The translations under genes and the position numbers were made by a program. The notes beneath the pieces were generated by a model that was not told the origin of the DNA, did not search any database, and saw only the letters and a program-made list of their open reading frames with translations. From IMG/VR virus record IMGVR_UViG_3300031933_000215, positions 1-64,000 of that record: a DNA stretch of 64,000 nt. One strand, given 5' to 3'. Below are positions 30,154-57,153 of this stretch, piece by piece. Position 1 is the first letter of the stretch. Each line of letters starts with the position of its first letter.

Positions 30154-32280
30154 ATGGAAAACCCATTTGTACTACCCGACGACAATTATCAACGCGACCT
30201 GAACATCATTGCCGGCTATTACGACGATGCCGCCAAGTACCTGCAACTTCAGACCGGTCAGTCGTTTGATACCTGTTTGGATTATGTGCGGTCTCGGGTA
30301 CATCCGGGAAAACCCAACGGATTCAACGATCCCCGAGCGTTGGTGTTGTCGAAAGACGAAAACGGCGATCGGGAACCAACCACCCAAAGCTTCATGCAGT
30401 TCTTGACCCGTGTGACCAAGAACAACCTGCTGTTGTCGCCCAGCATGGCGGCCTACATGCCGGAAGATCAGAAAGCCTCCACCCATGCAAAGTACATCGA
30501 AGAAGGGGTGGGTAAACGGAAGAAAGTCAAAGGGCAGATGTTCGAGGCCGAACGCAACGGCGACGACGAATTGGCGCTGGTGAAGAAGGGTGAACAGAAT
30601 AACCTGAAGATCAACAACAACTCTTACTCCGGTGCGACGGTGTCAACCGCCACCATCCTTTATTACAAGTCGACCCACAGCTCGCTGACGTCCACGTGTC
30701 GGACGGCCACGTCCTACGCCAATGCCGCCAACGAAAAGTTCATCGCCGGGAACCGCCATTACTACAACCCGGAAATTACCAAGTCGAACATTCTATCACT
30801 GATTAATGGGGCCGACCTTGAACTGATTGATCAAGCGTGTCGGGAATTCGATCTGGTATACCCGACCCCCAAGGACGTGGTGGACTGCGTGCGGTATTCG
30901 AGTGTGCAGTATTGGGACGGTGAGGAGCACCTCCAATCCATTATGAACATGGCTGAAACCATGACCCCCACTGAACGGGCGGCGGTGGTGTATGTTGCCG
31001 ACCTGTACCACCTCCACAAACACAACCCCAAGTTTGTGGTGAACTTCTTGATGGAGCTGTCGTCGGTGGGAAGTCCCGATGCTGGGGTGACGGACGAAGA
31101 GTTCAAGTCGTGTGACGACGATGTGCAGATGCTCGCAAACTTCCTGTGTTACGATCTAGTGGACGGTCGGAAAACGGAGACACTACTGGAGGAAGCGCCA
31201 GAGGTGTACGAGATGATCAAGAGCAGCGGCTTGAACGTCATCAACGTCCTACACAAATACAAGTCAATGATCCACGCATTCTGGTTGACCAAGACCGTGC
31301 CCAGTTCTATTCACGCGTTCCCCAGCGCGTACCGCAAGGCAGCGGTGGTATCGGACACCGACTCGACCATGTTCACCATGCAGTACTGGGTCGAACAGTG
31401 CTTCGGTCACGTCAGTTACGCGGTGGAAGCCCAACGCGTGGTGTTCGCCATGGTATTCTTGGTCAGCGAACTCATGCTACACATTCTGGCGATCCAGTCG
31501 GCAAACATGGGCGTGTCGAAGAAGAAGCTGCGCCTGTTGGCCATGAAGAACGAGTTCTACTTTGCCGTGTTGTCAATGACGACTCGGTCCAAGCACTACT
31601 ACGCTTCTCAGGACGCGCAAGAAGGCTTGATGTTCCCCAAACCCAAGCTGGAAGTAAAAGGCGTGGGTCTGCGTGATTCAAAGGTTCCCAAGAAGATCAA
31701 CGATGGGGCCAAGGATCTGATGGAAGACATCATCGGTACCATTAAGGCCGAAGAAAAGCTGAACATGCGGGAGATCTTGAAGCAGGTGGCGGACATTGAA
31801 CGGGAGATCGCGTCGAGTGTCCAGAGCGGTTCGTACGAGTACATGACGTCCGGTCAGGTAAAGTCCAAAGAGTCTTACAAGAACCCGGAAGTGTCAAACT
31901 ACATGCAGTACGAGTTGTGGCGGGATGTGTTCGCCCCGTTCTTGGGTAAGACCAAAGAGCCGCCGTACTCGGTGGTTAAGGTCTCACTGGTGGCCAGCAA
32001 CAAGACGGAGATCGAGGAGTGGTGCAAACGGATGGGCAACGACAGATTGGCCACGCGCCTCAAAGAATGGTTGCTTCAGCGCCGGCGTACCAACCTGTCA
32101 ACCCTGTTGATCCCACAGGAAGTGGTGGAAACCACCGGGATACCGAAAGAGATCATCGCCGGGGTCGACACCCGCAAACTCATCTTTAACACCATGGGGG
32201 TATACTACCTGATGTTGGAGTCGTTGGGAATCTTCAAGCAAGACAAGAAACTCGCACGACTGTTGTCCGACTACTATTAA
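30154..32280 (+). CDS. Family B DNA polymerase, polymerase-domain subunit (phiKZ gp50-like)
   Basis: K...N..Y helix motif (NLKINNNSYSG), catalytic VVSDTDS, KHYY, LEVKGVGL. Confidence 0.85.
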   Translation: MENPFVLPDDNYQRDLNIIAGYYDDAAKYLQLQTGQSFDTCLDYVRSRVHPGKPNGFNDPRALVLSKDENGDREPTTQSFMQFLTRVTKNNLLLSPSMAAYMPEDQKASTHAKYIEEGVGKRKKVKGQMFEAERNGDDELALVKKGEQNNLKINNNSYSGATVSTATILYYKSTHSSLTSTCRTATSYANAANEKFIAGNRHYYNPEITKSNILSLINGADLELIDQACREFDLVYPTPKDVVDCVRYSSVQYWDGEEHLQSIMNMAETMTPTERAAVVYVADLYHLHKHNPKFVVNFLMELSSVGSPDAGVTDEEFKSCDDDVQMLANFLCYDLVDGRKTETLLEEAPEVYEMIKSSGLNVINVLHKYKSMIHAFWLTKTVPSSIHAFPSAYRKAAVVSDTDSTMFTMQYWVEQCFGHVSYAVEAQRVVFAMVFLVSELMLHILAIQSANMGVSKKKLRLLAMKNEFYFAVLSMTTRSKHYYASQDAQEGLMFPKPKLEVKGVGLRDSKVPKKINDGAKDLMEDIIGTIKAEEKLNMREILKQVADIEREIASSVQSGSYEYMTSGQVKSKESYKNPEVSNYMQYELWRDVFAPFLGKTKEPPYSVVKVSLVASNKTEIEEWCKRMGNDRLATRLKEWLLQRRRTNLSTLLIPQEVVETTGIPKEIIAGVDTRKLIFNTMGVYYLMLESLGIFKQDKKLARLLSDYY

Positions 32281-32637: not shown

Positions 32638-32665
32638 AGCGATTCCTTTTAATGCAAGTGATGTT

Positions 32666-33763
32666 TCAACCCCAACCGTGGCCCTTACTGTCCAGGTGGT
32701 CAATAAGGTCACGAATCTCTTTGCGGTACTGCTTGACAACGGCGGGACTGCCGACACCAGAGAAGATGCTGTCGTTGCTGGCATCCACCAAACTGGTGTA
32801 CAGGTTGTTGAGGTACGTCCGGTCGCCTTTGTGCTGTTTCACTCCGGTCTCTAGGATGTAACGCATGTACGGTAGCCGTGCGATCTGCAATGCCCAGTCG
32901 TTGTGTCGACTGACCGGGTCTTTTGGCAGCTCCATGACTTGGTACAGGTTTTCTTTGATCAACATCGGGGTCCGGTAAGGGATTTGCTCGATGTCCACAT
33001 CCCGCCAAGCCTGACTGTCAAGCAGCCATTTGCCAAATCGATCCACTCGACCTGAGTAATCGGCCAGATAGAACGGATGCGGTGTTGGGTACTTCGGCAT
33101 GCCGATCCCACGGGAGAGTCGGGCCACGCGATTGAAGACCGCAATGTCCAGATAACTCGCCAGACTGTTGGGTAACACAAAACTGCCAATGAATCGAAAC
33201 ACGCTTTCGGGCTGATCGTATTGTTCGGCCTTGGCTTTCAACCAATACCGATACTGGATGGCCAACAGTGGGATGTCAATGACCGACACGCCCCAGCCCT
33301 TACCGGGGAGTTTGTTGTTCGGAACCGGCATCCCTAAGTCGGTGCGGGTGTGGTAGAGGAACGTAAACGGAGCCCAGTCCTTCCATTCCCGATCGGCCCG
33401 TTTCAGATCGGTGTTGCCTTCCGAGGCGATCAGGATCTCATCGGTCTGAGGTCCAAGACTCACCCCGGCTTCATGTACACGCCCACGATACGTACTGGAG
33501 GTGATGTTAAACGCACGAGCCACACCCACTGACGCGTCCTCAACAAACCGACGATACCGTTCGTCGTCCAGGTCCCACCGCCGTGGTATGTGCATAAGAA
33601 TCCGACCTAGGAGGTTGTCGGAATCCACCCGTTTCGGGTTACGTCGATAGTACGCTCGGACGTCGTTCAGTGACCGGGTGTAGAACCGCCGAAGAAAAGC
33701 CAACTGGGGGTAAACGAGCGCACCGGTTTTACGTCTGGGTGGTTCGCGGAAAAACTGATGCAT
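32666..33763 (-). CDS. Conserved phiKZ-like protein (gp52-like by synteny)
   Basis: About 365 aa ORF between DNA polymerase and chimallin. Confidence 0.65.
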   Translation of the reverse strand: MHQFFREPPRRKTGALVYPQLAFLRRFYTRSLNDVRAYYRRNPKRVDSDNLLGRILMHIPRRWDLDDERYRRFVEDASVGVARAFNITSSTYRGRVHEAGVSLGPQTDEILIASEGNTDLKRADREWKDWAPFTFLYHTRTDLGMPVPNNKLPGKGWGVSVIDIPLLAIQYRYWLKAKAEQYDQPESVFRFIGSFVLPNSLASYLDIAVFNRVARLSRGIGMPKYPTPHPFYLADYSGRVDRFGKWLLDSQAWRDVDIEQIPYRTPMLIKENLYQVMELPKDPVSRHNDWALQIARLPYMRYILETGVKQHKGDRTYLNNLYTSLVDASNDSIFSGVGSPAVVKQYRKEIRDLIDHLDSKGHGWG

Positions 33764-34507: not shown

Positions 34508-36403
34508 ATGGCTATTCATGACGAAAACGAAAAGCAACCGAACAACACTCAGCAGCCGAAGTCCGGTGCTGAGCAACGTACCGCTCAGAACCCGTACGCC
34601 AACCAGCAAACCGCCGGTGGCGCTGCACCCCAGGGAGGCCGCATGGGCATGGGCAGCCTGAACCAACACCTGCGTCGTTCCGGCTCTTACGATCGCAGCG
34701 AGTCCCGCTCTTCTGAGGCCCTGCGCGGTCTGCAGGAAACCCGTCGTGTACTCCTGGAGTCCCAAGCTCTGCAGGACGACTTTGAGCTGATCCGCTTCGA
34801 CCGCGATGCCAACCGCGTTGGCCTGCCGGCCATCCTGGCGACCAAATCCATCAAGCAGCAAGGTCAGGTGTACACCGTGGTTCGTACGCTGCTGCTGGAA
34901 GCTGAAGGCATCCGCCTGCAACCGCGCATCGAGCAGAACGGCATCCAGCGGATCGAGATCCCGACCCGTGCCCAGGACGTGTTCAACGATGTGTACTGGA
35001 ACCGGATCACCGATTTCCTGCGTCGTGCGAAAGGCGTCCAGGACATGACCGTGGTCGATGCTGGTCCGCTGGTGGTACCGGCCGACTTCGATTTCAAGGA
35101 CGACATGGATGTTTCCCGCATCCTGATCTCTTCTGTCAACCGTTGCGATGACATCATCGCTCGTCTGATGGGCGAAGATCCGTTCTCCATCGAGCTGTTC
35201 AAGCGTCAGGAAGAGCGTCTGACTGCGCGAATCGACTTCACTGGTGAGCAGGTCCACAACGTGGTCGGTCACCCGGTCCGTAGCGACGTGGTTGTTACCA
35301 TGAACCGCGCCGTGGCCAACGTTTCCCAGGAAGAAGATTTCTACGAGCGTGAAACCTCGTTCAACAGCGTGGCAGGCTTCATCAACCTGGAATACGCACC
35401 GGCGCCGCAGCAGCAGCAAGTGGCCTGGGGTCAGCAGCAGCCCGAAACCCAACTGTTCACTCCGAGCTTCGTCATCACTGACGTGTCTCAGGCGGACTGG
35501 ATTCAGGCACAGACTCCCGAGCTGTACCTGCTGGCGATCTCCAACGCTTACCGCGTAACTGCTGGTACTGCGTGGGTTCGTAGCTTCCTGCCACAGGTTG
35601 GTAAGGAAGGTGTGGACACTCGTGACATCGGCGCGCTGGGCTACATGACTCAGGCCGGTCAGAAGATCGAAACCAAGTCCGATAGCTTCACCGACGAGGA
35701 CTTCGTGAAACTGATGACCGCTCTGGTTCGTCCGAACCCGTCGTTCCTGATGGACGTCGACCCGGTTGGTGATCACGCTGCCATCGAGAACTACTTCGTG
35801 GACGCAGCTTTCGAAGGTCCTAACCAGCAGAAGGCGAACCAGAAGCTGATCCAGGCAGCCGACAACCTGACCGGTGGTCGTTTCTCCACTCACTTCAACG
35901 CGCGGGAAAACGCTCTGGTGATCCCGTACGGCCAGGAAGTGCACACCGGTTACTACATCGGTGAAGACGGTGAGAAGCGGGACATCCGCGATCTGGACGT
36001 TCTGGCCATGCTGAACCTGACCAAGGGCAACGTGTCCGACTTCATGGAATGGTACCGCACCCTGTGCGATAACACCATGCCTCCGGGCGTACGTCTGCAG
36101 CAGCGTGAGCGTTACGAACGTCAGTTCCTGGACAAGGGCCTGAAGATCACTGGTCGTGCAATTCGCCTGCTGCTGACCCCGGCGGCCATCGAGGCGCTGG
36201 ATGCAGCAACTCGCGAAGCAGGTCTGCACGTGGACATGGAAAACGTTACCAGCGTCATGGGCGCTCAGCGTTTCGTGGGCAACACCATGATCAACCAGTA
36301 CACAGTAAGCCGCAACGCCAACATGGGTTACGGTCAAGCCAACAACGGTCCGGCCTCCGGTCCGGCTCACGTTGGTGTGACTTCCAGCGGCCGCATGTAC
36401 TGA
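34508..36403 (+). CDS. chmA: Chimallin, major phage nuclear shell protein (phiKZ gp54-like)
   Basis: 631 aa with disordered N- and C-terminal segments; very strong codon bias; lies between DNA polymerase and the nvRNAP beta' gene, the position of chimallin in phiKZ/201phi2-1. Confidence 0.85.
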   Translation: MAIHDENEKQPNNTQQPKSGAEQRTAQNPYANQQTAGGAAPQGGRMGMGSLNQHLRRSGSYDRSESRSSEALRGLQETRRVLLESQALQDDFELIRFDRDANRVGLPAILATKSIKQQGQVYTVVRTLLLEAEGIRLQPRIEQNGIQRIEIPTRAQDVFNDVYWNRITDFLRRAKGVQDMTVVDAGPLVVPADFDFKDDMDVSRILISSVNRCDDIIARLMGEDPFSIELFKRQEERLTARIDFTGEQVHNVVGHPVRSDVVVTMNRAVANVSQEEDFYERETSFNSVAGFINLEYAPAPQQQQVAWGQQQPETQLFTPSFVITDVSQADWIQAQTPELYLLAISNAYRVTAGTAWVRSFLPQVGKEGVDTRDIGALGYMTQAGQKIETKSDSFTDEDFVKLMTALVRPNPSFLMDVDPVGDHAAIENYFVDAAFEGPNQQKANQKLIQAADNLTGGRFSTHFNARENALVIPYGQEVHTGYYIGEDGEKRDIRDLDVLAMLNLTKGNVSDFMEWYRTLCDNTMPPGVRLQQRERYERQFLDKGLKITGRAIRLLLTPAAIEALDAATREAGLHVDMENVTSVMGAQRFVGNTMINQYTVSRNANMGYGQANNGPASGPAHVGVTSSGRMY

Positions 36404-36485: not shown

Positions 36486-37931
36486 ATGGGCATACATACC
36501 GAGATGGTTGACTTCGATGAAGAGTTCATGCAGCTCGATATCGAACCCATTGTGGTCAACGATTACAACACCAGTATCCCGGAAGAGAAGGAGGCATTGG
36601 ATCGACATCTGTACACGCACTACCAAGGAACCGATGTCATTGAAGAAGCCGCTTCGTGTGACTGCGGTCGATTGACCAAGGTGTACCGGATTGGCGTTGT
36701 TTGCTCGGATTGCAATACCCCCGTCCAAAGCACGACCGATCGTCCGATAGAATCCATGCTGTGGATTCGAGCGCCGGAAGGGGTGAAGGCACTGTTCAGT
36801 CCGGAAGCGTGGATGGTCCTGGAACCGGCCATGCGGGTTCGGGAGTTCAACATCCTGGAGTTCCTGACCAACACGGATTATCGGTACGACATCAACCGGA
36901 TCAACTCGAAAGAGACCCGGCGTAAGATCAACAAGCTGGTGTCCAACAACATCCCTCGGGGATGGAACAATTTCATCGAACACTTCGATGAGATCATGGA
37001 CTTTCTGTTCAACGCCTCCGTCATCGATTCCAACAAAACCAACAAGCGGGAGTTGTGGCGGTTCATTCAAGAAAACAAGGCACGGTTCTTCCCCAAGCAC
37101 CTGCCGATTCCATCCAAGGTGTGTTTCGTTGTGGAGTCCACCACCAGTGGGGTTTACATCGACAAACCGTTGGGACTGGCAATGGATGCGGTACTGACCA
37201 TCGCGTCCATACGGTCGGCACCGGTGCCGTACAAGCCCACCGTGGTTCAGAATCGGGTGGCGAAGTCCGTCCGTGAACTGACCAAGTTCTACCACGAATA
37301 CACACGCAGCCGTCTGGCGAAGAAGCCGGGGATGTATCGGCGGCATGTGTTCGGGTCACGACTGCACTTCAGTGCTCGGGCGGTTATCACCTCCATTTCC
37401 GATCCTCACGAAGGAGACGAACTGCACATCCCTTGGGGGCTGGCCACCCAGCTGTTCAAGTACCATCTAGCCAACAAACTGCTGAAGCGCGGCTACAGTG
37501 CCAATGGCGCACTGGAGTTCATCTACAGCAATGTGTTACGCTACAACCCACTGTTGGACGAGCTGTTCCAGGAGCTCATCAACGAGGCACCGGACGGTGG
37601 TCCTGCGTGTGTGTTCCAGCGTAACCCGACCCTGCAACGGGGGTCAACCCAGCAGTTTCGGATCACTCGGGTGAAGACGGATGTGAACGACAACACCGTG
37701 TCGATGTCGGTCTTGACGCTCCGGGCCCCGAACGCTGACTTCGATGGCGACCAGCTGAACATGATCCTGATCCTGGATAATGAGATGCGTCGCGCCACCG
37801 CACGACTGGCCCCGCATCTGTGGGTGTTGTCGCCGGACATACCGCGTCAGATCTCAGGCAACTTGGAGCTTCAGGGTCCAGTGGTGGACACCGTGGTCAA
37901 CTGGCTACATGCCGACTACCTGTCGGCCTAA
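36486..37931 (+). CDS. Non-virion RNA polymerase beta' subunit, N-terminal part (phiKZ gp55-like)
   Basis: Zn site CDCG...CSDC, RRHVFGSRLHFSARAVIT, QRNPTL, catalytic NADFDGD. Confidence 0.92.
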   Translation: MGIHTEMVDFDEEFMQLDIEPIVVNDYNTSIPEEKEALDRHLYTHYQGTDVIEEAASCDCGRLTKVYRIGVVCSDCNTPVQSTTDRPIESMLWIRAPEGVKALFSPEAWMVLEPAMRVREFNILEFLTNTDYRYDINRINSKETRRKINKLVSNNIPRGWNNFIEHFDEIMDFLFNASVIDSNKTNKRELWRFIQENKARFFPKHLPIPSKVCFVVESTTSGVYIDKPLGLAMDAVLTIASIRSAPVPYKPTVVQNRVAKSVRELTKFYHEYTRSRLAKKPGMYRRHVFGSRLHFSARAVITSISDPHEGDELHIPWGLATQLFKYHLANKLLKRGYSANGALEFIYSNVLRYNPLLDELFQELINEAPDGGPACVFQRNPTLQRGSTQQFRITRVKTDVNDNTVSMSVLTLRAPNADFDGDQLNMILILDNEMRRATARLAPHLWVLSPDIPRQISGNLELQGPVVDTVVNWLHADYLSA

Positions 37932-38317: not shown

Positions 38318-38935
38318 ATGGCACAGTACGTACCAGGCGGTGCCGATCTCATTGACATCATGGCCGGTGGACGCCCCGACGAAGCCACCCGACAGTGGTT
38401 CGCCGAACGGGCCGAGGTGGTTCAGCAGAACCTGACCAACACCAGCCGGGCGTTCTTTGATCGGGCCCGGAGCCTGTATCAGACGATCTCCGAATCGCAA
38501 GCGCTGCAGATGCTGCGGAACCTCAGGACCAAGAGCGACGATGTGTGGTCGGGCAACGTGATCGAACCACTGCGGACGCTGGAGTCGATCCAGACCGCCT
38601 CGCCGGTCATGCAGCGGATGATCATGGCTCAGCCGGATCTGCGCAAGCGGTACCTGAACCAAGAAGTGGAAGCGTACGGCGACAACTACACCAACTTCCA
38701 CGGCGACGTTTGGGGTGCGATGCACTTCGACTACCGACGCGTCATGGACGGTGTACTGGAATTCGAAGACGAGTCCAGTTACGTCATCCGTCACTTCATC
38801 GACTACATGGAAGAGGACGAACGCAACCTGTCAACGCACGAGAAGATCGACATCCTGAATACGTGGGATGTGGTGAAACGTCTGTTAGACGAAGGCGGGG
38901 AAGACCCCACCTCACCGGTAGGCAACGACCTCTAA
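38318..38935 (+). CDS. Conserved phiKZ-like protein
   Basis: GGGG RBS; followed by a hairpin plus TATGCCGT. Confidence 0.7.
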   Translation: MAQYVPGGADLIDIMAGGRPDEATRQWFAERAEVVQQNLTNTSRAFFDRARSLYQTISESQALQMLRNLRTKSDDVWSGNVIEPLRTLESIQTASPVMQRMIMAQPDLRKRYLNQEVEAYGDNYTNFHGDVWGAMHFDYRRVMDGVLEFEDESSYVIRHFIDYMEEDERNLSTHEKIDILNTWDVVKRLLDEGGEDPTSPVGNDL

Positions 38936-40444: not shown

Positions 40445-41020
40445 ATGGAACAAAAAGCAAAGACTCATGAAGAGCTCCTGCTCGGCGATTCATTGTCGGT
40501 AATCCTGGAAGAAGAGCGGCGCCAATTGCCGGTCATCTCCGAGTATCAGTTTCAACGGGAAGTGGTGGACATCTTGGCCAACCCGTTTGGTGAGGACGCA
40601 CTGCGTCAGTACGCTATCTACGTGGGCGAGTTGACCAAACCACTGAACGTGGTGTCGAACGAGGACCGCAACCAGATCCTGTTTACGGTACCGGCATTGG
40701 TGCAGTCCCCAGTGACCACGATCGCTTACGGTTCCGGCATGACGGCGGAAGCGTTCATGCGGACGCTGAATCGGGACGTGGATTTGGGTGGTCGCCGAAT
40801 CAATCAGAAGATCCGAGACTTCATGATGCAGATGACCCAACGTCCGAACTACCTGGAGACGGTCATTTACCCCATCAGGGACATTCTCGCTCGCTATGGG
40901 CGCCAAATGGTGGATCTCCCTGGCGTTCCCCAGATGAACCAAACAAACCCCGTAGCGGGCTCCTCAGCGCCTCAGAGCACCAGTAACTCATCCTTCTCCG
41001 ACGACGAATATGAAGATTGA
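40445..41020 (+). CDS. Conserved phiKZ-like protein
   Basis: ORF overlapping the start of sbcD. Confidence 0.65.
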   Translation: MEQKAKTHEELLLGDSLSVILEEERRQLPVISEYQFQREVVDILANPFGEDALRQYAIYVGELTKPLNVVSNEDRNQILFTVPALVQSPVTTIAYGSGMTAEAFMRTLNRDVDLGGRRINQKIRDFMMQMTQRPNYLETVIYPIRDILARYGRQMVDLPGVPQMNQTNPVAGSSAPQSTSNSSFSDDEYED

Positions 41021-49060: not shown

Positions 49061-50239
49061 ATGACCGAACGAAACCGTAAAGAGATTGGGGTGGATATGC
49101 TTGGCGTGAACGCCATGGACCCCTACTTCCAAAATTCATCAGGTCCCCGGAAGGCAATGTTCTCCACCCAGATCGGTCAGGCCCCGATCGTGGATGGTAA
49201 TACCCCACGCCGGATCTTCACTGGCGTGGAAACCAAATACGCCGACGACACGTTTGATGTGTCACTACCTTGCCACGCAACCATTTTGAAAGTCATTCAC
49301 AAGTTCCCTATCGGCATGGGTCGGGACGTCATTCGGCATAACCCCACCACCGTGGTGATCTACGAAGATTACTACGACCCACATAAGACCATTGGGGTGT
49401 TGGAAGTCAACGATTTCATGTCACTACACCAGGACTTCGGGTTCCGCATGGAGAAAGATCCGGAAGTGTGGAACGAACTGGGTCCGCGTGTGATGATGGA
49501 GAAAGGGACGCGTCTGGCCAAATCCCCAGCGGTCCGTGAGAACGGTCAGTATGGGATTGGATTGGAAGCAGAAGTGGCGTTCATGTCCATGCCTGGTACC
49601 ATCGAGGATGGGTTCGTGGTGTCCCGGACGTTCCTGGAACGGATGACGCCCCGAACCTACAACACGGCCGTAGGTAATTGGGGGCGGAAAGCGTTCCCGT
49701 TGAACCTTTATGGAGACGACGAGCACTATAAGCCGTTCCCGGACATTGGCGATACCATCCGGGACGACGGATTAGTGTTTGCTCTGCGGGAGATCGATGA
49801 CGATCTTGGCGTGGCAGAGATGACCCCGCGTGCCCTGCGGGAAGTGGACTACGCGTTCGACAAACCATTCTTCGGGAAACCCGGGGCCAAGATCGTGGAT
49901 GTCAATGTCTACCACGATGACCGACTGAACCCGTCCAGTACGCCGGTCGGTATGGACACCCAAGCTCGGAAGTACTACGACGCTCAGGTGGTGTTCTACC
50001 AATCACTGATGGACGAGTATAATCGCTTGGCTAAACGGCGCGGTAAGCGTCTGTGCATCACTCCCGAGTTTAACCGTTTGTTGGTGGAAGCTCAGATGTT
50101 CCTGCCAGTGGCAGGGGACCGCCGTAAGCTGACCCGGATGTACCGTCTGGAGCAACTTGACGAATGGCGTGTGGAGGTGACCTACGAGAAACGCTTGGAA
50201 TCCAACATGGGTTACAAGTTCACTGACATGCATGGTGGT
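49061..50239 (+). CDS. Non-virion RNAP beta subunit C-terminal part, exon 1 (phiKZ gp71-73-like)
   Basis: RKAMFSTQIGQ, VAFMSMPGTIEDGFVVS; ends at GYKFTDMHGG, the first half of the GDKxxxRHGNKG motif. Confidence 0.9.
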
Positions 50240-51584
50240 AATTAATTTGTGAGGGTTCATCTATCTCCAGCAATATTAGGAGGTAAGATGAAAAAGAGTA
50301 AAGAGTTTAGACGCATTCCCGGATATGATCAATACGCTGTCAGTAAAGACGGTGTGGTGAAGTCCGTGGTTAGAGATATTGTACTCAGCCAATACCTTTT
50401 AGATGGGTATTTGATTGTAGACACGTTCCGTGGATCAAAAACGGAAACCCTACCTGTCCATAGAGCCGTTGCGTTGGCATGGGTTGAAAACCCAAACCCT
50501 GAGAAGTTTACAGTGGTCAACCACAAAGACGGCGATCGGACAAACAATTGGTACGAGAACCTTGAGTGGACTGACTACTCAGGGAACAACTACCACGCCA
50601 TTAATAGTGGTCTGCGCAACGACAACATTCCTTGTCGCATCCGGGATTTCGAAACCGGCGAGATAACGGAATTCAGTTCTATGGCACAGGCAGCAGTGGC
50701 GATGGGTTTACGGGCATGTGAACCGTACAGTATCTTAAGACCAAAGATGTTCGGGAAGTTAGTTGCCGATAAATACGAGCTTCGGTTTAAAGACGAACCA
50801 ACACCCTGGTTCTACGAAAATCGAACCGAGCGAGTTAAGCCTTCACGTTACATGGTTATTGTAACGGAAGAGGACGGTAGCAGTCGGGAAATCTTCTCGA
50901 CGCGTGCTCTCCTTAAAGAGTATCAACTCTACGACAGCCCAATGAAATCAATCCCGGAGCTGGCGAAGTTTGGGAATCAGAAATACCCAAACAAAGAGTT
51001 CAAGGTACTTGACAGTTACTCCGGGGATCTTTACCGGGTTACGCGTCAAACCAAAGAGAGCCGTAAGCTACCTGTCCTGGCACGTAATCCAGATGGGGAT
51101 ATGCATTTCGACTCTTTGACTCAATGTGCCAAACACTTCGGTGTTGATCGTTCCGTCATTCACAATCGACTTGATAAGCAAATAGATTTGGATGGATGGA
51201 CCTTCACAAGAAATATTGCCCCTTCAGTCCTTGATGGCTGAAGGAGTCTCCTTTAACTGACGGGAACGCCCTGAGAGCCTCATACACCAACTACATCGGT
51301 GGAAACACATGTAGGGCCAGTCTAATCAGCTGGACGGTAAAAGAGATGAGGATTGGGTGATCCGCAGCCAAGCTCCTACGGATCGCTGTGAAGCGAGCTA
51401 CGGAGAAGGTTCAACGACTAACCGTTCACCACGGTGTACCCGCCAAGCGGCGTCGGCTAATTACCGGTTAATAGGGAAATGGGGAGCCTCTCATTGAGGG
51501 GAAGATATAGTCTGGTCCTTGGGGAAACTCAAGGCGGGTGTCATTGCACACCGGGTACAAGTAGCGATTGTACTGGACAAAACG
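50240..51584 (+). mobile_element. Group I self-splicing intron in the nvRNAP beta gene
   Basis: Exon ends in U and intron ends in G; core elements GTGATCCGCAGCC (Q-like), GGTTCAACGACTA (R), GAAGATATAGTCT (S); splicing restores in-frame MHGG|KGVVC. Confidence 0.88.
50288..51241 (+). CDS. Intron-encoded HNH homing endonuclease (NUMOD4 + HNH_3 + C-terminal DNA-binding repeats)
   Basis: RRIPGYDQYAVSKDGVVKS; VHRAVALAW...VNHKDGDRTNNWYENLEW; GGAGG RBS. Confidence 0.9.
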   Translation: MKKSKEFRRIPGYDQYAVSKDGVVKSVVRDIVLSQYLLDGYLIVDTFRGSKTETLPVHRAVALAWVENPNPEKFTVVNHKDGDRTNNWYENLEWTDYSGNNYHAINSGLRNDNIPCRIRDFETGEITEFSSMAQAAVAMGLRACEPYSILRPKMFGKLVADKYELRFKDEPTPWFYENRTERVKPSRYMVIVTEEDGSSREIFSTRALLKEYQLYDSPMKSIPELAKFGNQKYPNKEFKVLDSYSGDLYRVTRQTKESRKLPVLARNPDGDMHFDSLTQCAKHFGVDRSVIHNRLDKQIDLDGWTFTRNIAPSVLDG

Positions 51585-52541
51585 AAAGGCGTCGTCTGTA
51601 AGATAATGGAGGACGCCGACATGCCTGTGGATGAGAACGGCAACCGAGCCGACGTGGTCATCTATGGCATCTCCACAGTTAAACGGATGAACTTTGGTCG
51701 CTTCTACGAACAGTTCATCAACGCTGCCAGTCGGGACCTACTACACAAAGTCCGTCGTCAGGCGGGTCTGAAACACAACGTCAAACCCACCGCCTATCAG
51801 TTGGCTACGGTCAAACAGAATACGGAGGTAGTGGAGTCCATTTGGCAACAACTGATGGGTTACTACGAGATCGTGGCCCCACTGCAACAGGACCTATTGA
51901 TTGACGACCCAGACCACTGGCGTCATGTAGAAGCGGTGCTGATGGACGAGGGGACCTGGCACGATGGAATCTACCTGTGGGTTCCGCCCGATAACCCGGT
52001 CAACAACCTAGCGATGGCAAAGGAGTTACGCGACAGTGAGTTCTGCCCGCACTATGGCCCGGTGACCTATCGGGACAACGCGGGTAAAATGGTGACCACG
52101 GTGGACCCCACATTGATCGGTACGCTGTACATGATCATGTTGGAGAAAACCGGGGAAGACTGGTCTGGGGTGGCTTCGGTGAAAACCAACCACTTCGGGG
52201 TACCGGCCAAGCTCAATAACTACGACAAACAAACCGCACCGGGACGGCAGGCACCGGTTCGAGCGCTGGGCGAGTCCGAGACCCGTTCGTACATCTCCAC
52301 GGTAGGTCCAGAAGCCACCATGGAGTTGTTGGACCAGTCAAACAACCACACCACCCACAGCCATGCCGTGGAGACAATCCTCAAAGCACCCAAGCCAACC
52401 AACATCGACAAGGTGGTGGATCGGAAGAAGGTGCCGTTTGGTGGTTCACGTCCGGTGGCACTGGTGCAACACGTGCTGAACTGCCGTGGCATCAAGTTTG
52501 TCTACCGACCAGACACGGAAGGCAGTGGGAACCAACTGTAA
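51585..52541 (+). CDS. Non-virion RNAP beta subunit C-terminal part, exon 2
   Basis: KGVVCKIM, DMPVDENGNRADVV, KRMNFGRFYEQ, RALGESE match beta conserved regions H and I. Confidence 0.9.
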   Translation, partial: KGVVCKIMEDADMPVDENGNRADVVIYGISTVKRMNFGRFYEQFINAASRDLLHKVRRQAGLKHNVKPTAYQLATVKQNTEVVESIWQQLMGYYEIVAPLQQDLLIDDPDHWRHVEAVLMDEGTWHDGIYLWVPPDNPVNNLAMAKELRDSEFCPHYGPVTYRDNAGKMVTTVDPTLIGTLYMIMLEKTGEDWSGVASVKTNHFGVPAKLNNYDKQTAPGRQAPVRALGESETRSYISTVGPEATMELLDQSNNHTTHSHAVETILKAPKPTNIDKVVDRKKVPFGGSRPVALVQHVLNCRGIKFVYRPDTEGSGNQL

Positions 52542-52565: not shown

Positions 52566-54536
52566 ATGAACCGTTACAACGCGCGTGATCTGTTGGCCCT
52601 CACCGTTGACGAGTTGTGGTCGCTCCCAGAGGAGCGCCACATCATCGTCTTTGACGATGGGGAACTGACAACACATACCCGGGCAACCATCACCTCGGTG
52701 TACCTCTGGTACATCATCCAACAATACCCCGACACTCCGATCTTGAAGGAGTTCCATCTGGGGGGCCAAACCTTCAGCAGTAAGCTGATGGTCGGGTTGA
52801 TCAACAAAGTGATCTGGACGGTCCATGATCACCATCAAGTGGACCCGGAGGTCTTGGCCAAATGGGCATTCGATACCACCAACCGTTTCTACAACGACTT
52901 CACCGTCCGCTTGGCGGCCCACGTCTCCAGCATGAGCATGTTCGACGTACTGGAGATCATGTATCACCCAGAGGTGCAGAAAGCCAACAAGGAAGTGGAG
53001 CCCACTCAAGCGTCCATCGAGGAGGAATGCTACCCCCGTTTGAAGAAGGTGTTGACCGAGGCGCCGGAATTGAACGGCAACCCGATGGCGGATGCCTGTC
53101 GATCGGGCACCGCTTCAGCCGGTCAGGTGTTACAGTGCGTGGGCCCTCGTGGGTTCATGACCGACATCAACTCGGACATCTTCCCCGAACCGATCATGAC
53201 CGGGTACATCGAGGGCATCAATGGGCTGTACGAGTCCACGATCGAATCCCGTTCCGGCTCGAAGTCACTGCTGTACAACAAGGAGCTGCTGCGGTCCACG
53301 GAATACTTCAACCGGAAGACCCAGTTGATTGCGGAGTACGTTCGCAACCTGCACCCTGGCGATTGCGGTACACCGCACGTTCGGGATTTCCCGGTCATGC
53401 ACGACAACCTCAAATCCCTGGAAGGGAAGTACCACGTGGTGGATGGGAAGCTGGAAGTCCTGCGTGGTGATGAGGAACACCTGTGCGGAAAACACATCAA
53501 GCTTCGTTCGGTTTTCGGGTGCATTCATCCCGACCCGGCGGGCGTGTGCTTGACATGTTATGGCGAGCTGGGTCTGGCCATTCCGTACGGCACCAACGTC
53601 GGGCAGGTCAGTGCGGTGTCCATGGGGGACAAGATCACCTCCAGCGTACTGTCGACCAAGCACTTGGATTCCACATCCCGTGTGGAGAAGTTCCACCTGG
53701 AAGGGGTTGAGGCCAAGTATTTGGAGTACGGCAAAGAACCGGAGATGCTCTACCTCAAGAAGAAACATCGGAACAAGTCGATCCGTTTGGTGGTGGCACG
53801 CCAGGAAGCCCCGAACTTGGCGGACGTTTTGATGCTGAATGATCTGGATAATTACCCGGTCGCCAACGCCAGTCAGATTACGATGATGCAATTCATCGTG
53901 GATGAAGGTGACGAGGGTCAAACGCAGGACGTCCTTCGGGTCTCCCTGTACAACCGTCGTTCCAGCTTCTCCAAAGAGTTGCTGCGCCACATCTCCAAGA
54001 CGCGATGGACCCACGACAGTCGGGACAACATCGTGATCGATCTGACCGGTTTCGACCTTACCCAACCACTGCTTTCACTGCCGTTCAAGCACGTTAACAT
54101 GCACGAGGTCATGAAGCGCATTCAGAGCTTCCTGCATTCGTCCAGCGACAGTGAGAACAAGAAACTGAAGGTGTCTACACGTGACGTATCCCGAAACAAA
54201 CTCAAGTTCCTGAAAAACTACAAGGACCCGACAGAGGCCTTGGTCAGCTTCACGGCCATGTTGAATGAAAAGCTCAACATCAACATTGTGCATTGTGAGA
54301 TCCTGCTGTACGCCATGATGGTTCGGTCCTCAGCGCAGCGCGATTATCGACTCCCCATCCCGGGATTCGATGGCTCGTTTGAGAACTACAACAACCTCAT
54401 GATGAACCGCAGTCTCAGTGCTGCCATGGCTTACGAGAAACAAAGCGCCCCGCTGGTCTCTCCTTCCAGTTTCGTCTACACTGATAGGAATGACCACCCG
54501 TACGATCTGATCGTGTTGGGAGGGCGTGTGAGCTAA
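52566..54536 (+). CDS. Non-virion RNAP beta' subunit, C-terminal part (phiKZ gp74-like)
   Basis: SGTASAGQVLQCVGPRG, DCGT, SVFGC...GVCLTCYG, GTNVGQVSAVSMGDKITSSVLSTKH. Confidence 0.9.
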   Translation: MNRYNARDLLALTVDELWSLPEERHIIVFDDGELTTHTRATITSVYLWYIIQQYPDTPILKEFHLGGQTFSSKLMVGLINKVIWTVHDHHQVDPEVLAKWAFDTTNRFYNDFTVRLAAHVSSMSMFDVLEIMYHPEVQKANKEVEPTQASIEEECYPRLKKVLTEAPELNGNPMADACRSGTASAGQVLQCVGPRGFMTDINSDIFPEPIMTGYIEGINGLYESTIESRSGSKSLLYNKELLRSTEYFNRKTQLIAEYVRNLHPGDCGTPHVRDFPVMHDNLKSLEGKYHVVDGKLEVLRGDEEHLCGKHIKLRSVFGCIHPDPAGVCLTCYGELGLAIPYGTNVGQVSAVSMGDKITSSVLSTKHLDSTSRVEKFHLEGVEAKYLEYGKEPEMLYLKKKHRNKSIRLVVARQEAPNLADVLMLNDLDNYPVANASQITMMQFIVDEGDEGQTQDVLRVSLYNRRSSFSKELLRHISKTRWTHDSRDNIVIDLTGFDLTQPLLSLPFKHVNMHEVMKRIQSFLHSSSDSENKKLKVSTRDVSRNKLKFLKNYKDPTEALVSFTAMLNEKLNINIVHCEILLYAMMVRSSAQRDYRLPIPGFDGSFENYNNLMMNRSLSAAMAYEKQSAPLVSPSSFVYTDRNDHPYDLIVLGGRVS

Positions 54537-54585
54537 CCACGGAGGACGGGGGAGGGTGACAGCTCCCCCGTTGTTGTACCCAACA

Positions 54586-57153
54586 ATGAAATCATTACTG
54601 ACGCTCGACGTTTATTCTCACGGGGTCCGCATCAGTGGATACACCCGTGAGACCTTTCGTATCATTGCTGTTTTTTTGGAACGACTGGCGCTAAAAGAAC
54701 CACGCCACATTCCACAGGAACGGCGAATGGTCATGGAACTGAAGAAACGGTTCTACGGCCTAACCGATTCCCGCAAGGAATCTTTCATCCACCGCTACCA
54801 GCTTGAAGAGTTTCTGCTCTACTTGAAAGACCGTGGATTGGAAGGGCGATTTGAGATCAACCATATCGACGCCCCGGTACCCACCCCAGCCACGTTTGAT
54901 ATTTACGATCACTATGAAACCCGTGGATACCAGATTCCCATCGTTGAGTTCATGACCACCCCCGATAAGCGCTCTTGCCGCCTGGACCTCCAGACCGGCA
55001 AGGGGAAGGCCGAGACACTCTATTCTCGAATTAAAGTGCCTGGTGGTTGGTCTACAATGGGTGAGATGGAGGTTGGTACGAAAGTCACAGCATGGGATGG
55101 AACCACCACCCATGTAACGGGAGTATACCCACAGGGAACCACTCCCGTTTATAGGGTAACGTTTTGGGACGGACGTCATGTTGATGTTTGTCCTGAGCAT
55201 CTCTGGAAAGCGTTCTATGTGAACACTGTACCCCATAGACGGTGGCGGGTTATTGATACCTTGGAACTCAAAAGACTAAGTGAAATGCCCAATCCACGGG
55301 TATATGTTCCTTTGTGTCAATCCGAAGACGGCCCTGAGGTTGATGTCACAATACCGCCATACACACTGGGCGTACTTATTGGAGACGGTAACCTAACCGG
55401 AACCGGTATAAATATATTCAAACCAGATAACGAGCTGTTCGAAAATATTAGGGAGGAATTATTACCGGGTCACGAGTTACGCGACTCTCTAAAGAAGCCG
55501 GGTTTACGTTCCTTGGTAAATGCCAACGGAGGTGAAAACCTATACCGTCGCTACCTCAAAGAAATGGACATTGACGGAACCTATTCTTGGGAAAAATACA
55601 TTCCCCAGAATTACCTCCACGGATCTACGGAACAACGGTGGGCATTACTACAGGGATTGATGGACACAGACGGGACAGTCAACACCAGAGAAACCGGTGG
55701 GGCTGTGTCGTTTAACTCCACCAGTCGTCGTTTGGCGGGGCAAGTTCAATACCTTGTGCGTTCTCTTGGCGGTATTGCCTCAATCAGTGAACGCAATACA
55801 CAATACACATACAACGGAGAAAAATGTCAGGGACGTAAGTCTTACGATGTTAACATCCGTCACCCGAAACAACGAAAACTATTCCGCCTACCACGGAAGT
55901 TAGAACGTATACCTGAAACTAACCAATATTCGGAGGATTTAAAACTCAGAGTTCGTTCGGTTGAATACCTTGGTGAGGAACCAACTCAATGCATTTCAAT
56001 CGATCATCCGGAGCGCCTGTATGTAACCAATGACTTCATTGTGACACACAACACCTATTGCGCCTTACGGTCGGTGGCCACCCTGGGCGTTCGGACGGTG
56101 GTGATGGTGTCGCCCAAATACTTCGGCATTTGGGAAAAAGCCCTGAAAGAAACCTACAAAGACATAGATGGACGTTACTGTACGGTTTCCGGTTCCGCCG
56201 AGTTGCGGGCGTTGATTGAGAAGGGCGTGGAAGGAGACCTGGACTACGATGTGATCATTGTCTCCAACGTAACCTACCGCAGCTACCTGGAATCGTACGA
56301 GCGGTTCGGTGAGGCGATCACCAGCATCGGCTATTTGGTCCCGCCCCCACGGTTTCATGAAGCCTTGGGCGCTGGGGTGCAAATCAACGATGAGTTCCAA
56401 GACGACCCCGGTCTGGTGTTCCGCACGGATGTTTACACGAATGTCAGAAAACAGTTGTACTTGTCCGCCACGCCATTCACTGGGAACGAGTTCGTCACCC
56501 GCATGATCGACGTGATGCTCCCCAAAGAGACGTCCTGTCCCTTGCCGGAATACGACCAGTACATCAATGTGATCGGACTGATGTACCACGACCCGGACGT
56601 TAAACGCAAAGACTACCTGACGCCCTTTAAGAACACCTACAATCACACCCGGTACGAGAAACGCCTGCTCAAAGCCAAGCGTCGATTGGAACGGTACAAG
56701 CGGATGGTGTTCAAGGTCATCAACGGCATTTACATCAAAGACCGGGAACCGGGCCAGAAGCTACTGGTTCTGTGCGCCACGGTGGACTTCATCAAACACC
56801 TGACCAAGGAGTTGAAGCTGAAGTACCCCGACTTGACCATCGGTGAGTTCGTGGCGGGGTCCAACCCCAAGACGCTGCAAACCAACGACATCACGGTGTC
56901 GACCATCAAGTCGGCCGGGACCGGTCAAGACATCATTGACTTAAGAGAAGTACTGCTGCTGCAAGCAACGGATTCCAAGAAGGACAACATCCAAATCCTG
57001 GGCCGTCTGAGACGCATGAAAAACTGGCCAGAACACACACCACGCATGACGTATATGGTGTGTATGGACATCCCACAGCAGATTCGTTACTTCAAAAATA
57101 AGAAGGGTCATTTCGATGGACGCGTCGTGTCCCATCGGGTGATGCGTATCTAG
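54586..57153 (+). CDS. SF2 (UvsW-like) helicase precursor containing an intein (phiKZ gp75-like)
   Basis: Walker A LQTGKGK|T split by the intein; QINDEF, LYLSATP, SAGTGQDI, QILGRLRR motifs. Confidence 0.88.
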   Translation: MKSLLTLDVYSHGVRISGYTRETFRIIAVFLERLALKEPRHIPQERRMVMELKKRFYGLTDSRKESFIHRYQLEEFLLYLKDRGLEGRFEINHIDAPVPTPATFDIYDHYETRGYQIPIVEFMTTPDKRSCRLDLQTGKGKAETLYSRIKVPGGWSTMGEMEVGTKVTAWDGTTTHVTGVYPQGTTPVYRVTFWDGRHVDVCPEHLWKAFYVNTVPHRRWRVIDTLELKRLSEMPNPRVYVPLCQSEDGPEVDVTIPPYTLGVLIGDGNLTGTGINIFKPDNELFENIREELLPGHELRDSLKKPGLRSLVNANGGENLYRRYLKEMDIDGTYSWEKYIPQNYLHGSTEQRWALLQGLMDTDGTVNTRETGGAVSFNSTSRRLAGQVQYLVRSLGGIASISERNTQYTYNGEKCQGRKSYDVNIRHPKQRKLFRLPRKLERIPETNQYSEDLKLRVRSVEYLGEEPTQCISIDHPERLYVTNDFIVTHNTYCALRSVATLGVRTVVMVSPKYFGIWEKALKETYKDIDGRYCTVSGSAELRALIEKGVEGDLDYDVIIVSNVTYRSYLESYERFGEAITSIGYLVPPPRFHEALGAGVQINDEFQDDPGLVFRTDVYTNVRKQLYLSATPFTGNEFVTRMIDVMLPKETSCPLPEYDQYINVIGLMYHDPDVKRKDYLTPFKNTYNHTRYEKRLLKAKRRLERYKRMVFKVINGIYIKDREPGQKLLVLCATVDFIKHLTKELKLKYPDLTIGEFVAGSNPKTLQTNDITVSTIKSAGTGQDIIDLREVLLLQATDSKKDNIQILGRLRRMKNWPEHTPRMTYMVCMDIPQQIRYFKNKKGHFDGRVVSHRVMRI
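55009..56052 (+). mobile_element. Class 3 intein (348 aa) with LAGLIDADG endonuclease
   Basis: Starts with Ala (AETLYSRIK), ends in THN before Thr; WCT triad in EHLW, TQCISI and VTHN; LGVLIGDG and LQGLMDTDG motifs; lower GC than flanks. Confidence 0.9.

What the first reader, a model, noticed from the sequence alone, without database searches (positions are those of the whole stretch)
30154..57153. Complete phage-nucleus core block (DNA pol, ChmA, nvRNAP, SbcD, ChmC-like, PicA-like, helicase) in a divergent genome
Order and motifs match the Chimalliviridae core block that builds a proteinaceous nucleus shielding DNA from CRISPR-Cas and restriction, with its own multisubunit RNAP and selective protein import. 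The system is established. This genome appears distinct from the AT-rich phiKZ (GC looks near or above 50 percent by eye, class II RNR, broken phuZ), so it may represent an unstudied lineage and a natural test of a nucleus without a spindle.
Basis: established knowledge. Interest (0 to 1): 0.6.

Follow-up and report, generated by a model that had tools for sequence, protein, structure and literature searches.

The report
Uncultured chimallivirus phage-nucleus gene block
This stretch is the ordinary, fully conserved "phage nucleus" gene block of a phiKZ-like jumbo phage known only from metagenomes; its tubulin gene phuZ is freshly broken by a 61-base deletion, and spindle-less nucleus-forming phages are already known.

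Summary
Window 30154-57153 is gene-for-gene colinear with phiKZ gp50-gp75 and Noxifer gp044-gp067. It carries the divergent family-B DNA polymerase, chimallin ChmA (Pfam PF25677, E 5e-195; matches solved chimallins), four of the five nvRNAP subunits, and Imp3-, SbcD-, ChmC/Imp6- and PicA/Imp1-like genes, a gp70-like gene and the helicase. The fifth nvRNAP subunit (gp123-like) lies at G000:110079-111695.

The genome is a 231.8-kb IMG/VR record with 53% GC. It sits in a ChmA clade made only of metagenomic sequences. The best cultured match is Noxifer at 47% ChmA identity, and Noxifer has the same GC.

The class II RNR is confirmed. phuZ really is broken: a 61-bp frameshifting deletion removes the GGAG nucleotide-binding loop. 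The remaining 284 codons differ from a sister genome by 40 synonymous and 0 non-synonymous changes, and two relatives keep an intact 313-aa PhuZ. The break is therefore very recent, a population variant, or an assembly error. PhuZ is missing from about a third of chimalliviruses, and PhuZ-less members have already been imaged.

Extras are a group I intron with an HNH gene in the nvRNAP beta gene, an intein in the helicase P-loop and a GIY-YIG endonuclease gene. This is a new member of a known kind, of modest interest.

The parts
30154..32280 (+). Divergent family-B DNA polymerase (phiKZ gp50-like)
   Evidence: PF20286 E 9e-287. 55% identity to phiKZ gp50 and 53% to Noxifer gp044.
32666..33763 (-). 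phiKZ gp52-like protein (annotated as a structural head protein in phiKZ)
   Evidence: phrog_3938 E 1e-93. 39-43% identity to phiKZ gp52 and Noxifer gp048.
34508..36403 (+). Chimallin ChmA, major nuclear shell protein (631 aa)
   Evidence: PF25677 E 4.9e-195. PDB 8fne E 4.6e-160 and 7sqq E 5.9e-118. 46.7% identity to Noxifer and 39% to phiKZ. The ATG at 34508 fits relatives of 627-630 aa.
36486..37931 (+). nvRNAP beta-prime N-terminal subunit (gp55-like), uninterrupted, with the catalytic NADFDGD motif at residue 418
   Evidence: phrog_2987 E 1e-175. PF00623. 51% identity to phiKZ gp55. Motif seen.
38318..38935 (+). phiKZ gp59 (Imp3)-like import factor
   Evidence: phrog_3254 E 3e-58. 46% identity to phiKZ gp59. 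gp59 = Imp3 per bioRxiv 10.1101/2024.03.27.586873.
41010..42164 (+). SbcD-like nuclease subunit (gp65-like)
   Evidence: phrog_100 E 8e-57. 53% identity to phiKZ gp65.
42151..42993 (+). phiKZ gp66-like conserved protein
   Evidence: phrog_3229 E 2e-81. 41% identity.
43107..43829 (+). ChmC / Imp6-like protein (gp67-like): Whirly-type RNA-binding part plus a G/N/Q-rich, then acidic, C-terminal tail
   Evidence: phrog_3284 E 1e-56. 44% identity to phiKZ gp67 over residues 1-194 and 52% to Noxifer gp060. Tail composition seen. gp67 = ChmC = Imp6 per PMC11077065.
43977..45545 (+). nvRNAP gp68-like (sigma-like fifth) subunit
   Evidence: phrog_3209 E 7e-140. 44% identity to phiKZ gp68 over its full length.
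45586..47241 (+). PicA / Imp1-like nuclear import factor (gp69-like)
   Evidence: phrog_3141 E 6e-140. 48% identity to phiKZ gp69, E 9e-154. gp69 = PicA per PMC11087766.
47216..48559 (+). phiKZ gp70 / PhiPA3 gp64-like shell-associated protein
   Evidence: phrog_3520 E 2e-103. 43-49% identity over the N-terminal 260-290 residues.
49061..50239 (+). nvRNAP beta subunit (gp71-73-like), exon 1
   Evidence: 52% identity to phiKZ gp71. It ends in HGG, where the uninterrupted Noxifer gene continues with KGVVC.
50240..51584 (+). Group I intron (1345 nt) carrying an HNH homing-endonuclease ORF (50288-51241)
   Evidence: Rfam RF00028 at 69.7 bits against 50, positions 51163-51534. The HNH ORF is 58% identical to phiKZ gp72. 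U precedes the 5' splice site and G precedes the 3' site. Removing the intron gives a 711-aa open frame.
51585..52541 (+). nvRNAP beta subunit, exon 2 (gp73-like)
   Evidence: The PF00562 match starts exactly at 51585. 50% identity to phiKZ gp73.
52566..54536 (+). nvRNAP beta-prime C-terminal subunit (gp74-like)
   Evidence: phrog_3015 E 2e-225. 53% identity to phiKZ gp74.
54556..57153 (+). SF2 DNA helicase (gp75-like). Its Walker A motif is interrupted by a 348-aa intein with a LAGLIDADG endonuclease (nt 55009-56052).
   Evidence: phiKZ gp75 and Noxifer gp067 each align in two pieces that flank 55009-56052. PF14528 and PF05204. Intein ends seen. DnaB intein structures 6rix and 6bs8 match.
21745..22623 (+). 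Broken phuZ, outside the finding's coordinates. The start codon and 9 codons are followed by a 61-bp frameshifting deletion at 21771|21772, then 284 in-frame codons.
   Evidence: PF22334 E 1e-31. Alignment to the intact 313-aa gene of a relative.

Best explanation
This is the conserved core gene block of a nucleus-forming jumbo phage (Chimalliviridae). PhiPA3 workers call it conserved blocks I and II. It sits in an uncultured phage genome of about 232 kb and 53% GC.

By orthology with phiKZ and PhiPA3 it should work as follows (all inferred):
1. ChmA assembles the protein shell around the replicating phage DNA.
2. The PicA/Imp1-, ChmC/Imp6- and Imp3-like proteins sit at the shell. They license protein import and probably handle mRNA.
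3. The DNA polymerase, SbcD-like nuclease and helicase replicate and repair DNA inside the shell.
4. The five-subunit non-virion RNA polymerase transcribes middle and late genes there.

Shown here: every gene is present, intact, colinear and 39-63% identical to its phiKZ or Noxifer counterpart.

Two of the genes need removal of a selfish element to function. The nvRNAP beta mRNA must splice out a group I intron, and the helicase must splice out an intein.

The accessory tubulin gene phuZ, 8 kb upstream, carries a recent 61-bp frameshifting deletion. If that deletion is real, this genotype builds a nucleus but no PhuZ spindle.
For: - Chimallin: Pfam profile at 650 bits and matches to solved chimallins.
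- Synteny: colinear tblastn series against phiKZ gp50-gp75 and Noxifer gp044-gp067.
- PHROG families: a match for nearly every gene in the block.
- nvRNAP: catalytic NADFDGD motif and a clean 711-aa spliced beta frame.
- Fifth subunit: gp123-like gene at G000:110079-111695, 54.5% identical.
- Second polymerase set: a virion-type beta-prime gene at 63694-65010.
- Gene names: from PMC11087766, PMC11077065 and bioRxiv 10.1101/2024.03.27.586873.
- Conserved block order is a family trait (PMC12908238).
- The same block is kept in relatives with 95% and 70% ChmA identity.
Against: - No experiment was done. The host is unknown, and nucleus formation, intron splicing and intein splicing are all inferred.
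- CheckV rates the record 77% complete. However, it has terminal repeats, and relatives' contigs are 226 and 231 kb.
- Four of eight phiKZ PicA positions where mutations change import differ here, so cargo specificity probably differs.
- I looked at the virion RNAP only through one subunit.
Confidence: 0.9

Rival explanations
1. The phuZ break is a fixed, adaptive loss. On this reading the lineage is giving up the tubulin spindle, which makes it a special natural experiment.
For: - A 61-bp deletion removes PhuZ residues 10-30, including the GGAG loop, and shifts the frame.
- There is no second tubulin gene in the genome.
- PhuZ has been lost repeatedly in the family (PMC12908238).
Against: - The remaining 284 codons show 40 synonymous and 0 non-synonymous differences from a relative of about 90% nucleotide identity. 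The gene was therefore under selection until very recently.
- Relatives at 95% and 70% ChmA identity keep intact 313-aa genes.
- There is only one lesion and no further decay.
- PhuZ-less chimalliviruses have already been studied.
Confidence: 0.25
2. The phuZ deletion is an assembly or sequencing artefact, or a minority variant captured in the consensus. The real phage would then have an intact spindle gene.
For: - The record is a metagenome assembly.
- The rest of the gene is perfectly conserved at the protein level.
- Two other length differences lie nearby: a 320-bp one upstream at 21649|21650, and a 1150-bp endonuclease insertion downstream at 23260-24409.
Against: - A clean 61-bp loss inside unique, non-repetitive coding sequence is not a typical assembler error.
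- No obvious repeat flanks the junction.
Confidence: 0.35
3. The block is a relic in a defective or chimeric contig and does not specify a working nucleus.
For: - CheckV estimates 77% completeness.
- One gene near the block (phuZ) is broken, and two genes in the block are interrupted.
Against: - All core genes have full-length open frames.
- The interruptions are a bona fide group I intron and an intein with intact splice-site residues.
- The record has terminal repeats.
- Independent contigs from other samples carry the same block.
Confidence: 0.03

Closest known systems
Pseudomonas phage Noxifer (Noxifervirus), genes gp044-gp067
   Same: Same gene order from the DNA polymerase to the helicase. 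It is the best cultured match for ChmA (46.7%). GC is the same (53%).
   Different: - Protein identity is only 34-55%.
- In the ChmA tree Noxifer sits in a different clade.
- Noxifer has an uninterrupted nvRNAP beta gene (712 aa), an intein-free helicase (514 aa) and an intact PhuZ.
- Its genome is 278 kb against 232 kb here.
- The best phage-collection matches to the class II RNR are not chimalliviruses.
Pseudomonas phage phiKZ, gp50-gp75 (ChmA gp54; nvRNAP gp55, gp68, gp71-73, gp74; Imp3 gp59; ChmC/Imp6 gp67; PicA/Imp1 gp69)
   Same: Colinear orthologues at 30-63% identity. A group I intron with an HNH gene sits at exactly the same codon (HGG|K) of the nvRNAP beta gene, and its endonuclease is 58% identical.
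   Different: - phiKZ is 36.8% GC and 280 kb.
- It has a second intron with an HNH gene in gp55, which this genome lacks.
- It has no helicase intein and an intact PhuZ.
- Several small phiKZ genes (gp51, 53, 57, 58, 60, 61, 63) have no match here.
PhuZ-less chimalliviruses (Vibrio phage Ariel, Erwinia phage Asesino)
   Same: Nucleus genes without a working tubulin gene (PMC12908238).
   Different: Those phages lack the gene altogether. Here a nearly intact gene carries one fresh deletion, and sister genomes keep it.
Mycobacterial DnaB helicase P-loop inteins (PDB 6bs8, 6rix) and helicase inteins of other jumbo phages
   Same: - Inserted in the ATPase P-loop.
- Matching N- and C-terminal splicing blocks, including the H-x-W, C-x-x-x-D and THN motifs.
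- About 50% identical inteins occur in the helicases of Xanthomonas RTH11, Erwinia Rebecca and Serratia BUCT660.
   Different: The host protein here is the phiKZ gp75-type SF2 helicase. The intein carries a full LAGLIDADG endonuclease domain. Splicing is untested.

Membership tests
Chimalliviridae (nucleus-forming jumbo phages) | Encodes a chimallin (ChmA) homologue | tested here: met
   PF25677 at 650 bits against a cut-off of 27. Solved chimallins match at E 5e-160 to 7e-34.
Chimalliviridae (nucleus-forming jumbo phages) | Conserved core genes in conserved blocks and order | tested here: met
   Colinear with phiKZ gp50-gp75 and Noxifer gp044-gp067. I compared only this block and its left flank, not all 68 core genes.
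Chimalliviridae (nucleus-forming jumbo phages) | Split multisubunit non-virion RNA polymerase (gp55, gp68, gp71-73, gp74, gp123 types) | tested here: met
   Four subunits lie in the block and the gp123-like one at G000:110079-111695. NADFDGD motif and an intact spliced beta frame.
Chimalliviridae (nucleus-forming jumbo phages) | PicA/Imp1 import factor, a core gene present in all ChmA-encoding phages | tested here: met
   45586-47241 is 48% identical to phiKZ gp69, E 9e-154. ChmC/Imp6- and Imp3-like genes are also present.
Chimalliviridae (nucleus-forming jumbo phages) | Virion-packaged second multisubunit RNA polymerase | tested here: inconclusive
   I found one virion-type beta-prime gene at 63694-65010 (phrog_2962, E 4e-150). 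I did not look for the other subunits.
Chimalliviridae (nucleus-forming jumbo phages) | Falls inside the family in phylogeny | tested here: met
   In a quick ChmA tree of 64 sequences the window nests among chimallins, in an all-metagenome clade next to the Pseudomonas-phage clade. This is a single-gene tree with few cultured references.
Chimalliviridae (nucleus-forming jumbo phages) | Forms a proteinaceous nucleus in infected cells | not testable with these tools
   This needs the phage, its host and imaging.
PhuZ phage tubulin | Intact N-terminal GTPase part with the GGAG (T1) nucleotide-binding loop | tested here: not met
   A 61-bp deletion removes residues 10-30 and shifts the frame. The Pfam Tubulin match is below its cut-off (25.3 against 33), while the C-terminal domain PF22334 is strong.
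Group I self-splicing intron | Catalytic core matches the family model. U precedes the 5' splice site and G precedes the 3' site. Removal restores the host frame. | tested here: met
   RF00028 at 69.7 bits against 50. Splice junctions GGT|AAT and ACG|AAA, and a 711-aa frame equal to uninterrupted Noxifer gp065. I could not assign the P1/guide pairing. Splicing itself is untested.
Intein (probably class 3) | Hint-domain splicing blocks, terminal His-Asn followed by a Ser/Thr/Cys nucleophile, and excision that restores the host motif. For class 3: no N-terminal nucleophile, plus the Trp, Cys and Thr triad. | tested here: met
   - Residues 152-499 start with Ala and end in THN, followed by Thr.
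- Excision restores the Walker A motif GKGKT and a 517-aa helicase, the size seen in the relative.
- H-L-W, the Cys in block F and the T of THN align with DnaB inteins.
- The class assignment is my inference from those motifs. Splicing is untested.
Class II (adenosylcobalamin) ribonucleotide reductase | NrdJ-type large subunit and no radical-generating small subunit | tested here: met
   TIGR02504 at 546 bits against a cut-off of 400, while class I TIGR02506 falls below its cut-off. No PF00268 match in the genome.

The most novel reading that the evidence does not exclude
Sister phages of about 90% nucleotide identity carry different selfish elements at the same essential genes.
- In the nvRNAP beta gene, this genome has a phiKZ-type group I intron with an HNH gene.
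- Its closest relative has an unrelated-looking group I intron with a different ORF, inserted 8 nt downstream.
- A more distant relative has an ORF-less intron at the first site.
- The helicase intein and a GIY-YIG gene are present only in this genome.

On the most novel reading, these are competing homing elements used in phage-against-phage exclusion during co-infection. The phuZ-deleted genotype would then be a real, circulating spindle-less variant that survives through such co-infections.
Probability: 0.2. Interest if true: 0.45.

Novelty: new member of a known kind. Interest (0 to 1): 0.3.

Why it matters
The finding adds a complete genome-level example of an uncultured chimallivirus clade. 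These phages are smaller (about 226-232 kb) than the cultured Pseudomonas members and carry a B12-dependent RNR.

It shows that the nucleus, import and nvRNAP block is kept gene for gene even at about 40-55% protein identity. That supports using the block as the family signature.

It does not open a new question about nuclei without spindles, because PhuZ-less nucleus formers are already described. The turnover of introns, inteins and endonuclease genes between near-identical genomes is a small but usable data set on homing-element dynamics in jumbo phages.

Tried and rejected
- **Early misreading of phuZ.** I first read short upstream fragments in two frames as the decayed N-terminus of PhuZ. 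Alignment with the intact gene of a relative showed this was wrong. The true start is the ATG at 21745, and the lesion is one 61-bp deletion.
- **Search for PhuZ relatives.** The search for related loci with the PhuZ fragment found no close relative in the viral contig collection. I reached relatives instead through the ChmA word search and by walking along contigs.
- **Read evidence.** I did not try another route.
- **Intron guide sequence.** A complementarity scan for the guide sequence that pairs with the exon 1 end gave many weak G-U-rich candidates and no clear answer.
- **Virion polymerase by Pfam.** The Pfam RNAP families found only the nvRNAP genes. The virion polymerase gene showed up only with a PHROG family.
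- **No annotation.** Pfam and NCBIfam give nothing for the gp68-, PicA- and gp70-like proteins, and NCBIfam gives nothing for the ChmC-like protein. Their names rest on orthology to phiKZ plus the literature.
- **tRNAs.** No tRNA genes in the genome.
- **Not run.** I did not run structure prediction, complex prediction or the large representative protein search. The profile and orthology evidence left nothing open that they would change.
Full report
**What the window is**

The window is the first 64 kb of an IMG/VR virus record of 231,818 bp. The record has direct terminal repeats and a CheckV estimate of 77% completeness. Genome GC is 53.1% and the block's GC is 54.1%. No tRNA genes were found.

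**Checking the observation**

| Gene | Coordinates | Evidence |
|---|---|---|
| Divergent family-B DNA polymerase | 30154-32280 | PF20286, E 9e-287 |
| ChmA | 34508-36403 | PF25677, E 4.9e-195, 650 bits against a cut-off of 27 |
| nvRNAP beta-prime N-terminal subunit | 36486-37931 | phrog_2987 E 1e-175; PF00623; NADFDGD at residue 418 |
| SbcD-like nuclease | 41010-42164 | phrog_100, E 8e-57 |
| nvRNAP beta-prime C-terminal subunit | 52566-54536 | phrog_3015, E 2e-225 |

ChmA also matches the solved chimallins of PhiPA3 (8fne, E 4.6e-160), 201phi2-1 (7sqq, E 5.9e-118) and Goslar (7sqt, E 7e-34).

I took the annotated phiKZ and Noxifer regions and ran their proteins against the genome by tblastn. 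The result is one colinear series:

| phiKZ protein | Identity to the window |
|---|---|
| gp50 | 55% |
| gp52 | 39% |
| gp54 | 40% |
| gp55 | 51% |
| gp59 | 46% |
| gp62 | 33% |
| gp64 | 30% |
| gp65 | 53% |
| gp66 | 41% |
| gp67 | 44% |
| gp68 | 44% |
| gp69 | 48% |
| gp70 | 43% |
| gp71 | 52% |
| gp72 | 58% |
| gp73 | 50% |
| gp74 | 53% |
| gp75 | 44% (N-terminal piece), 63% (C-terminal piece) |

Noxifer gp044-gp067 gives the same picture.

**Naming the genes of unknown Pfam family**

The literature held here fixes the names:
- phiKZ gp69 is PicA, also called Imp1. It is a core gene in all ChmA-encoding phages (PMC11087766).
- phiKZ gp67 is ChmC (PhiPA3 gp61). It is a Whirly-fold RNA-binding protein with a disordered N/G-rich, then acidic, tail (PMC11077065). 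The same protein is Imp6, a direct binder of Imp1.
- phiKZ gp59 is Imp3 (bioRxiv 10.1101/2024.03.27.586873).

The window's orthologues are 45586-47241 (PicA-like), 43107-43829 (ChmC-like) and 38318-38935 (Imp3-like). The ChmC-like protein ends in a G/N/Q-rich and then acidic tail, as described for ChmC.

The gp68-like protein (43977-45545) is the sigma-like fifth nvRNAP subunit. The remaining nvRNAP subunit, gp123-like, lies outside the window at G000:110079-111695 and is 54.5% identical. A virion-type beta-prime gene starts at 63694.

**How it most likely works**

By orthology, this is the standard chimallivirus programme:
1. ChmA builds the shell around the replicating DNA.
2. PicA/Imp1, together with ChmC/Imp6 and Imp3, licenses import at the shell.
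3. The polymerase, helicase and SbcD-like nuclease act inside.
4. The nvRNAP transcribes middle and late genes inside.

Presence, integrity and order of the genes are shown. The functions are inferred.

Four of eight phiKZ PicA positions whose mutation alters import differ here (C121S, H365N, P446G, N466D). This fits the known phage-specific cargo recognition.

**How divergent the genome is**

The best cultured ChmA match among 50,697 phage records is Noxifer at 46.7%. PhiPA3 follows at 44.8% and phiKZ at 39.4%.

The word search of the large protein collection found metagenomic ChmA proteins at 95, 85, 89 (partial), 75, 73 and 70% identity, and many at 55-67%. Some sit on contigs of 226 and 231 kb.

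A quick maximum-likelihood ChmA tree of 64 sequences puts the window in a clade of 12 sequences, all metagenomic. That clade lies outside the well-supported clade containing phiKZ, PhiPA3, 201phi2-1, Phabio, Psa21 and Noxifer. The tree is single-gene, the careful search was not finished, and few cultured references are included.

So this is an uncultured lineage. It is not an unseen one: large surveys of chimallin-encoding metagenomic phages exist (PMC12625630). GC above 50% distinguishes it from phiKZ (36.8%) but not from Noxifer (53.2%).

The RNR at 866-2995(-) is class II. NrdJ_Z scores 546 bits against a cut-off of 400, and the genome has no NrdB. Its best phage-collection relatives are Thermus and Rhodobacter phages at about 41%, so it looks like a lineage-specific accessory gene.

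**The broken phuZ**

The ORF at 21769-22623 has the phage-tubulin C-terminal domain (PF22334, E 1e-31), but its GTPase match is sub-threshold.

I walked along the contigs of two relatives, with 95% and 70% ChmA identity. Both have an intact 313-aa PhuZ.

Nucleotide alignment with the closer relative shows what happened. The window keeps the true start (ATG at 21745) and nine codons. It then lacks 61 bases, which removes residues 10-30 including the GGAG loop and shifts the frame.

The remaining 284 codons differ at 40 codons, all synonymously. Selection therefore acted on this gene for essentially all of the divergence between two genomes that are about 88-92% identical in nucleotides. The lesion is very recent, or a population variant, or an assembly error.

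The genome has no second tubulin gene.

The review PMC12908238 states three relevant points:
- PhuZ is missing from about one third of the family.
- PhuZ is not essential.
- The PhuZ-less phages Ariel and Asesino form nuclei.

The 'nucleus without a spindle' angle is thus neither new nor secure here.

**Selfish elements inside the block**

*Intron in the nvRNAP beta gene.* The gene is split by a group I intron at 50240-51584.
- The Rfam core lies at 51163-51534 and scores 69.7 bits.
- The intron carries an HNH gene at 50288-51241.
- The uninterrupted Noxifer gene fixes the junction as HGG|KGVVC. U precedes the 5' splice site and G precedes the 3' site. The spliced frame is 711 aa without stops.
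- phiKZ and the 70% relative have an intron at exactly this site. The 70% relative's intron is an ORF-less 364-nt version.
- The 95% relative has a different intron 8 nt downstream, with an ORF that hits PF05265.

*Intein in the helicase.* The helicase is 865 aa and carries a 348-aa intein at residues 152-499 (nt 55009-56052) inside its Walker A motif.
- The intein begins with Ala and ends in THN, followed by Thr.
- It has a LAGLIDADG domain.
- It aligns with DnaB P-loop inteins of known structure.
- Its Ala1, H-x-W, block-F Cys and THN pattern suggests a class 3 intein. That class assignment is my inference.
- It is absent from both relatives (517 and 510 aa), from phiKZ and from Noxifer.
- Inteins about 50% identical occur in the helicases of other jumbo phages.

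**Verdict**

The system is well known. The genome is a new, uncultured member of a known kind. The spindle-less argument is weak. Interest is modest.

Noticed in passing
window 50240-51584; L017:16265-17921; L018:16215-16578: The group I intron in the nvRNAP beta gene differs between close relatives. This genome has a phiKZ-type intron with an HNH gene. The 95%-ChmA relative has a different intron 8 nt downstream, with a PF05265 ORF. The 70% relative has an ORF-less 364-nt intron at the first site. Noxifer has none.
   Followed up: partly
window 55009-56052 (helicase residues 152-499): An intein with a LAGLIDADG endonuclease sits inside the helicase Walker A motif. It starts with Ala and ends in THN followed by Thr, which looks like class 3. 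It is absent from both close relatives, phiKZ and Noxifer. Inteins about 50% identical occur in the helicases of other jumbo phages.
   Followed up: partly
window 23260-24409 (ORF 23326-24333): A free-standing GIY-YIG endonuclease gene with an I-TevI-like DNA-binding end forms a 1150-bp insertion relative to the 95%-ChmA relative. It lies between the gp41-like and gp42-like genes, just downstream of the broken phuZ.
   Followed up: partly
window 21649|21650: There is a 320-bp length difference against the closest relative. The relative has a 113-aa gene just upstream of phuZ (L008:7058-7399) that this genome lacks. The direction of change, deletion here or insertion there, is not resolved.
   Followed up: no
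window 866-2995 (-): Class II (B12-dependent) ribonucleotide reductase, with no NrdB in the genome. The best phage-collection matches are Thermus and Rhodobacter phages at about 41%, so it looks like an acquired accessory gene.
   Followed up: partly
L005:11734-14059 (contig from another sample, same ChmA as the 95% relative): In this sibling contig the gp55-like nvRNAP gene is cut short at 416 aa and followed by an HNH gene, as in phiKZ gp55/gp56, where Rfam finds a group I intron. The window's gp55-like gene is uninterrupted (481 aa).
   Followed up: no
window 63694-64000 (continues to G000:65010): A second, virion-type RNA polymerase beta-prime gene (phrog_2962, E 4e-150) starts at the right end of the window.
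   Followed up: no
G000:196022-196741 (-), outside the window: A further HNH endonuclease gene, weakly similar to phiKZ gp56 and gp72, lies elsewhere in the genome.
   Followed up: no
window 22624-22675: A GC-rich hairpin followed by a run of T lies directly after the phuZ stop codon. It looks like an intrinsic terminator and is identical in the closest relative.
   Followed up: no
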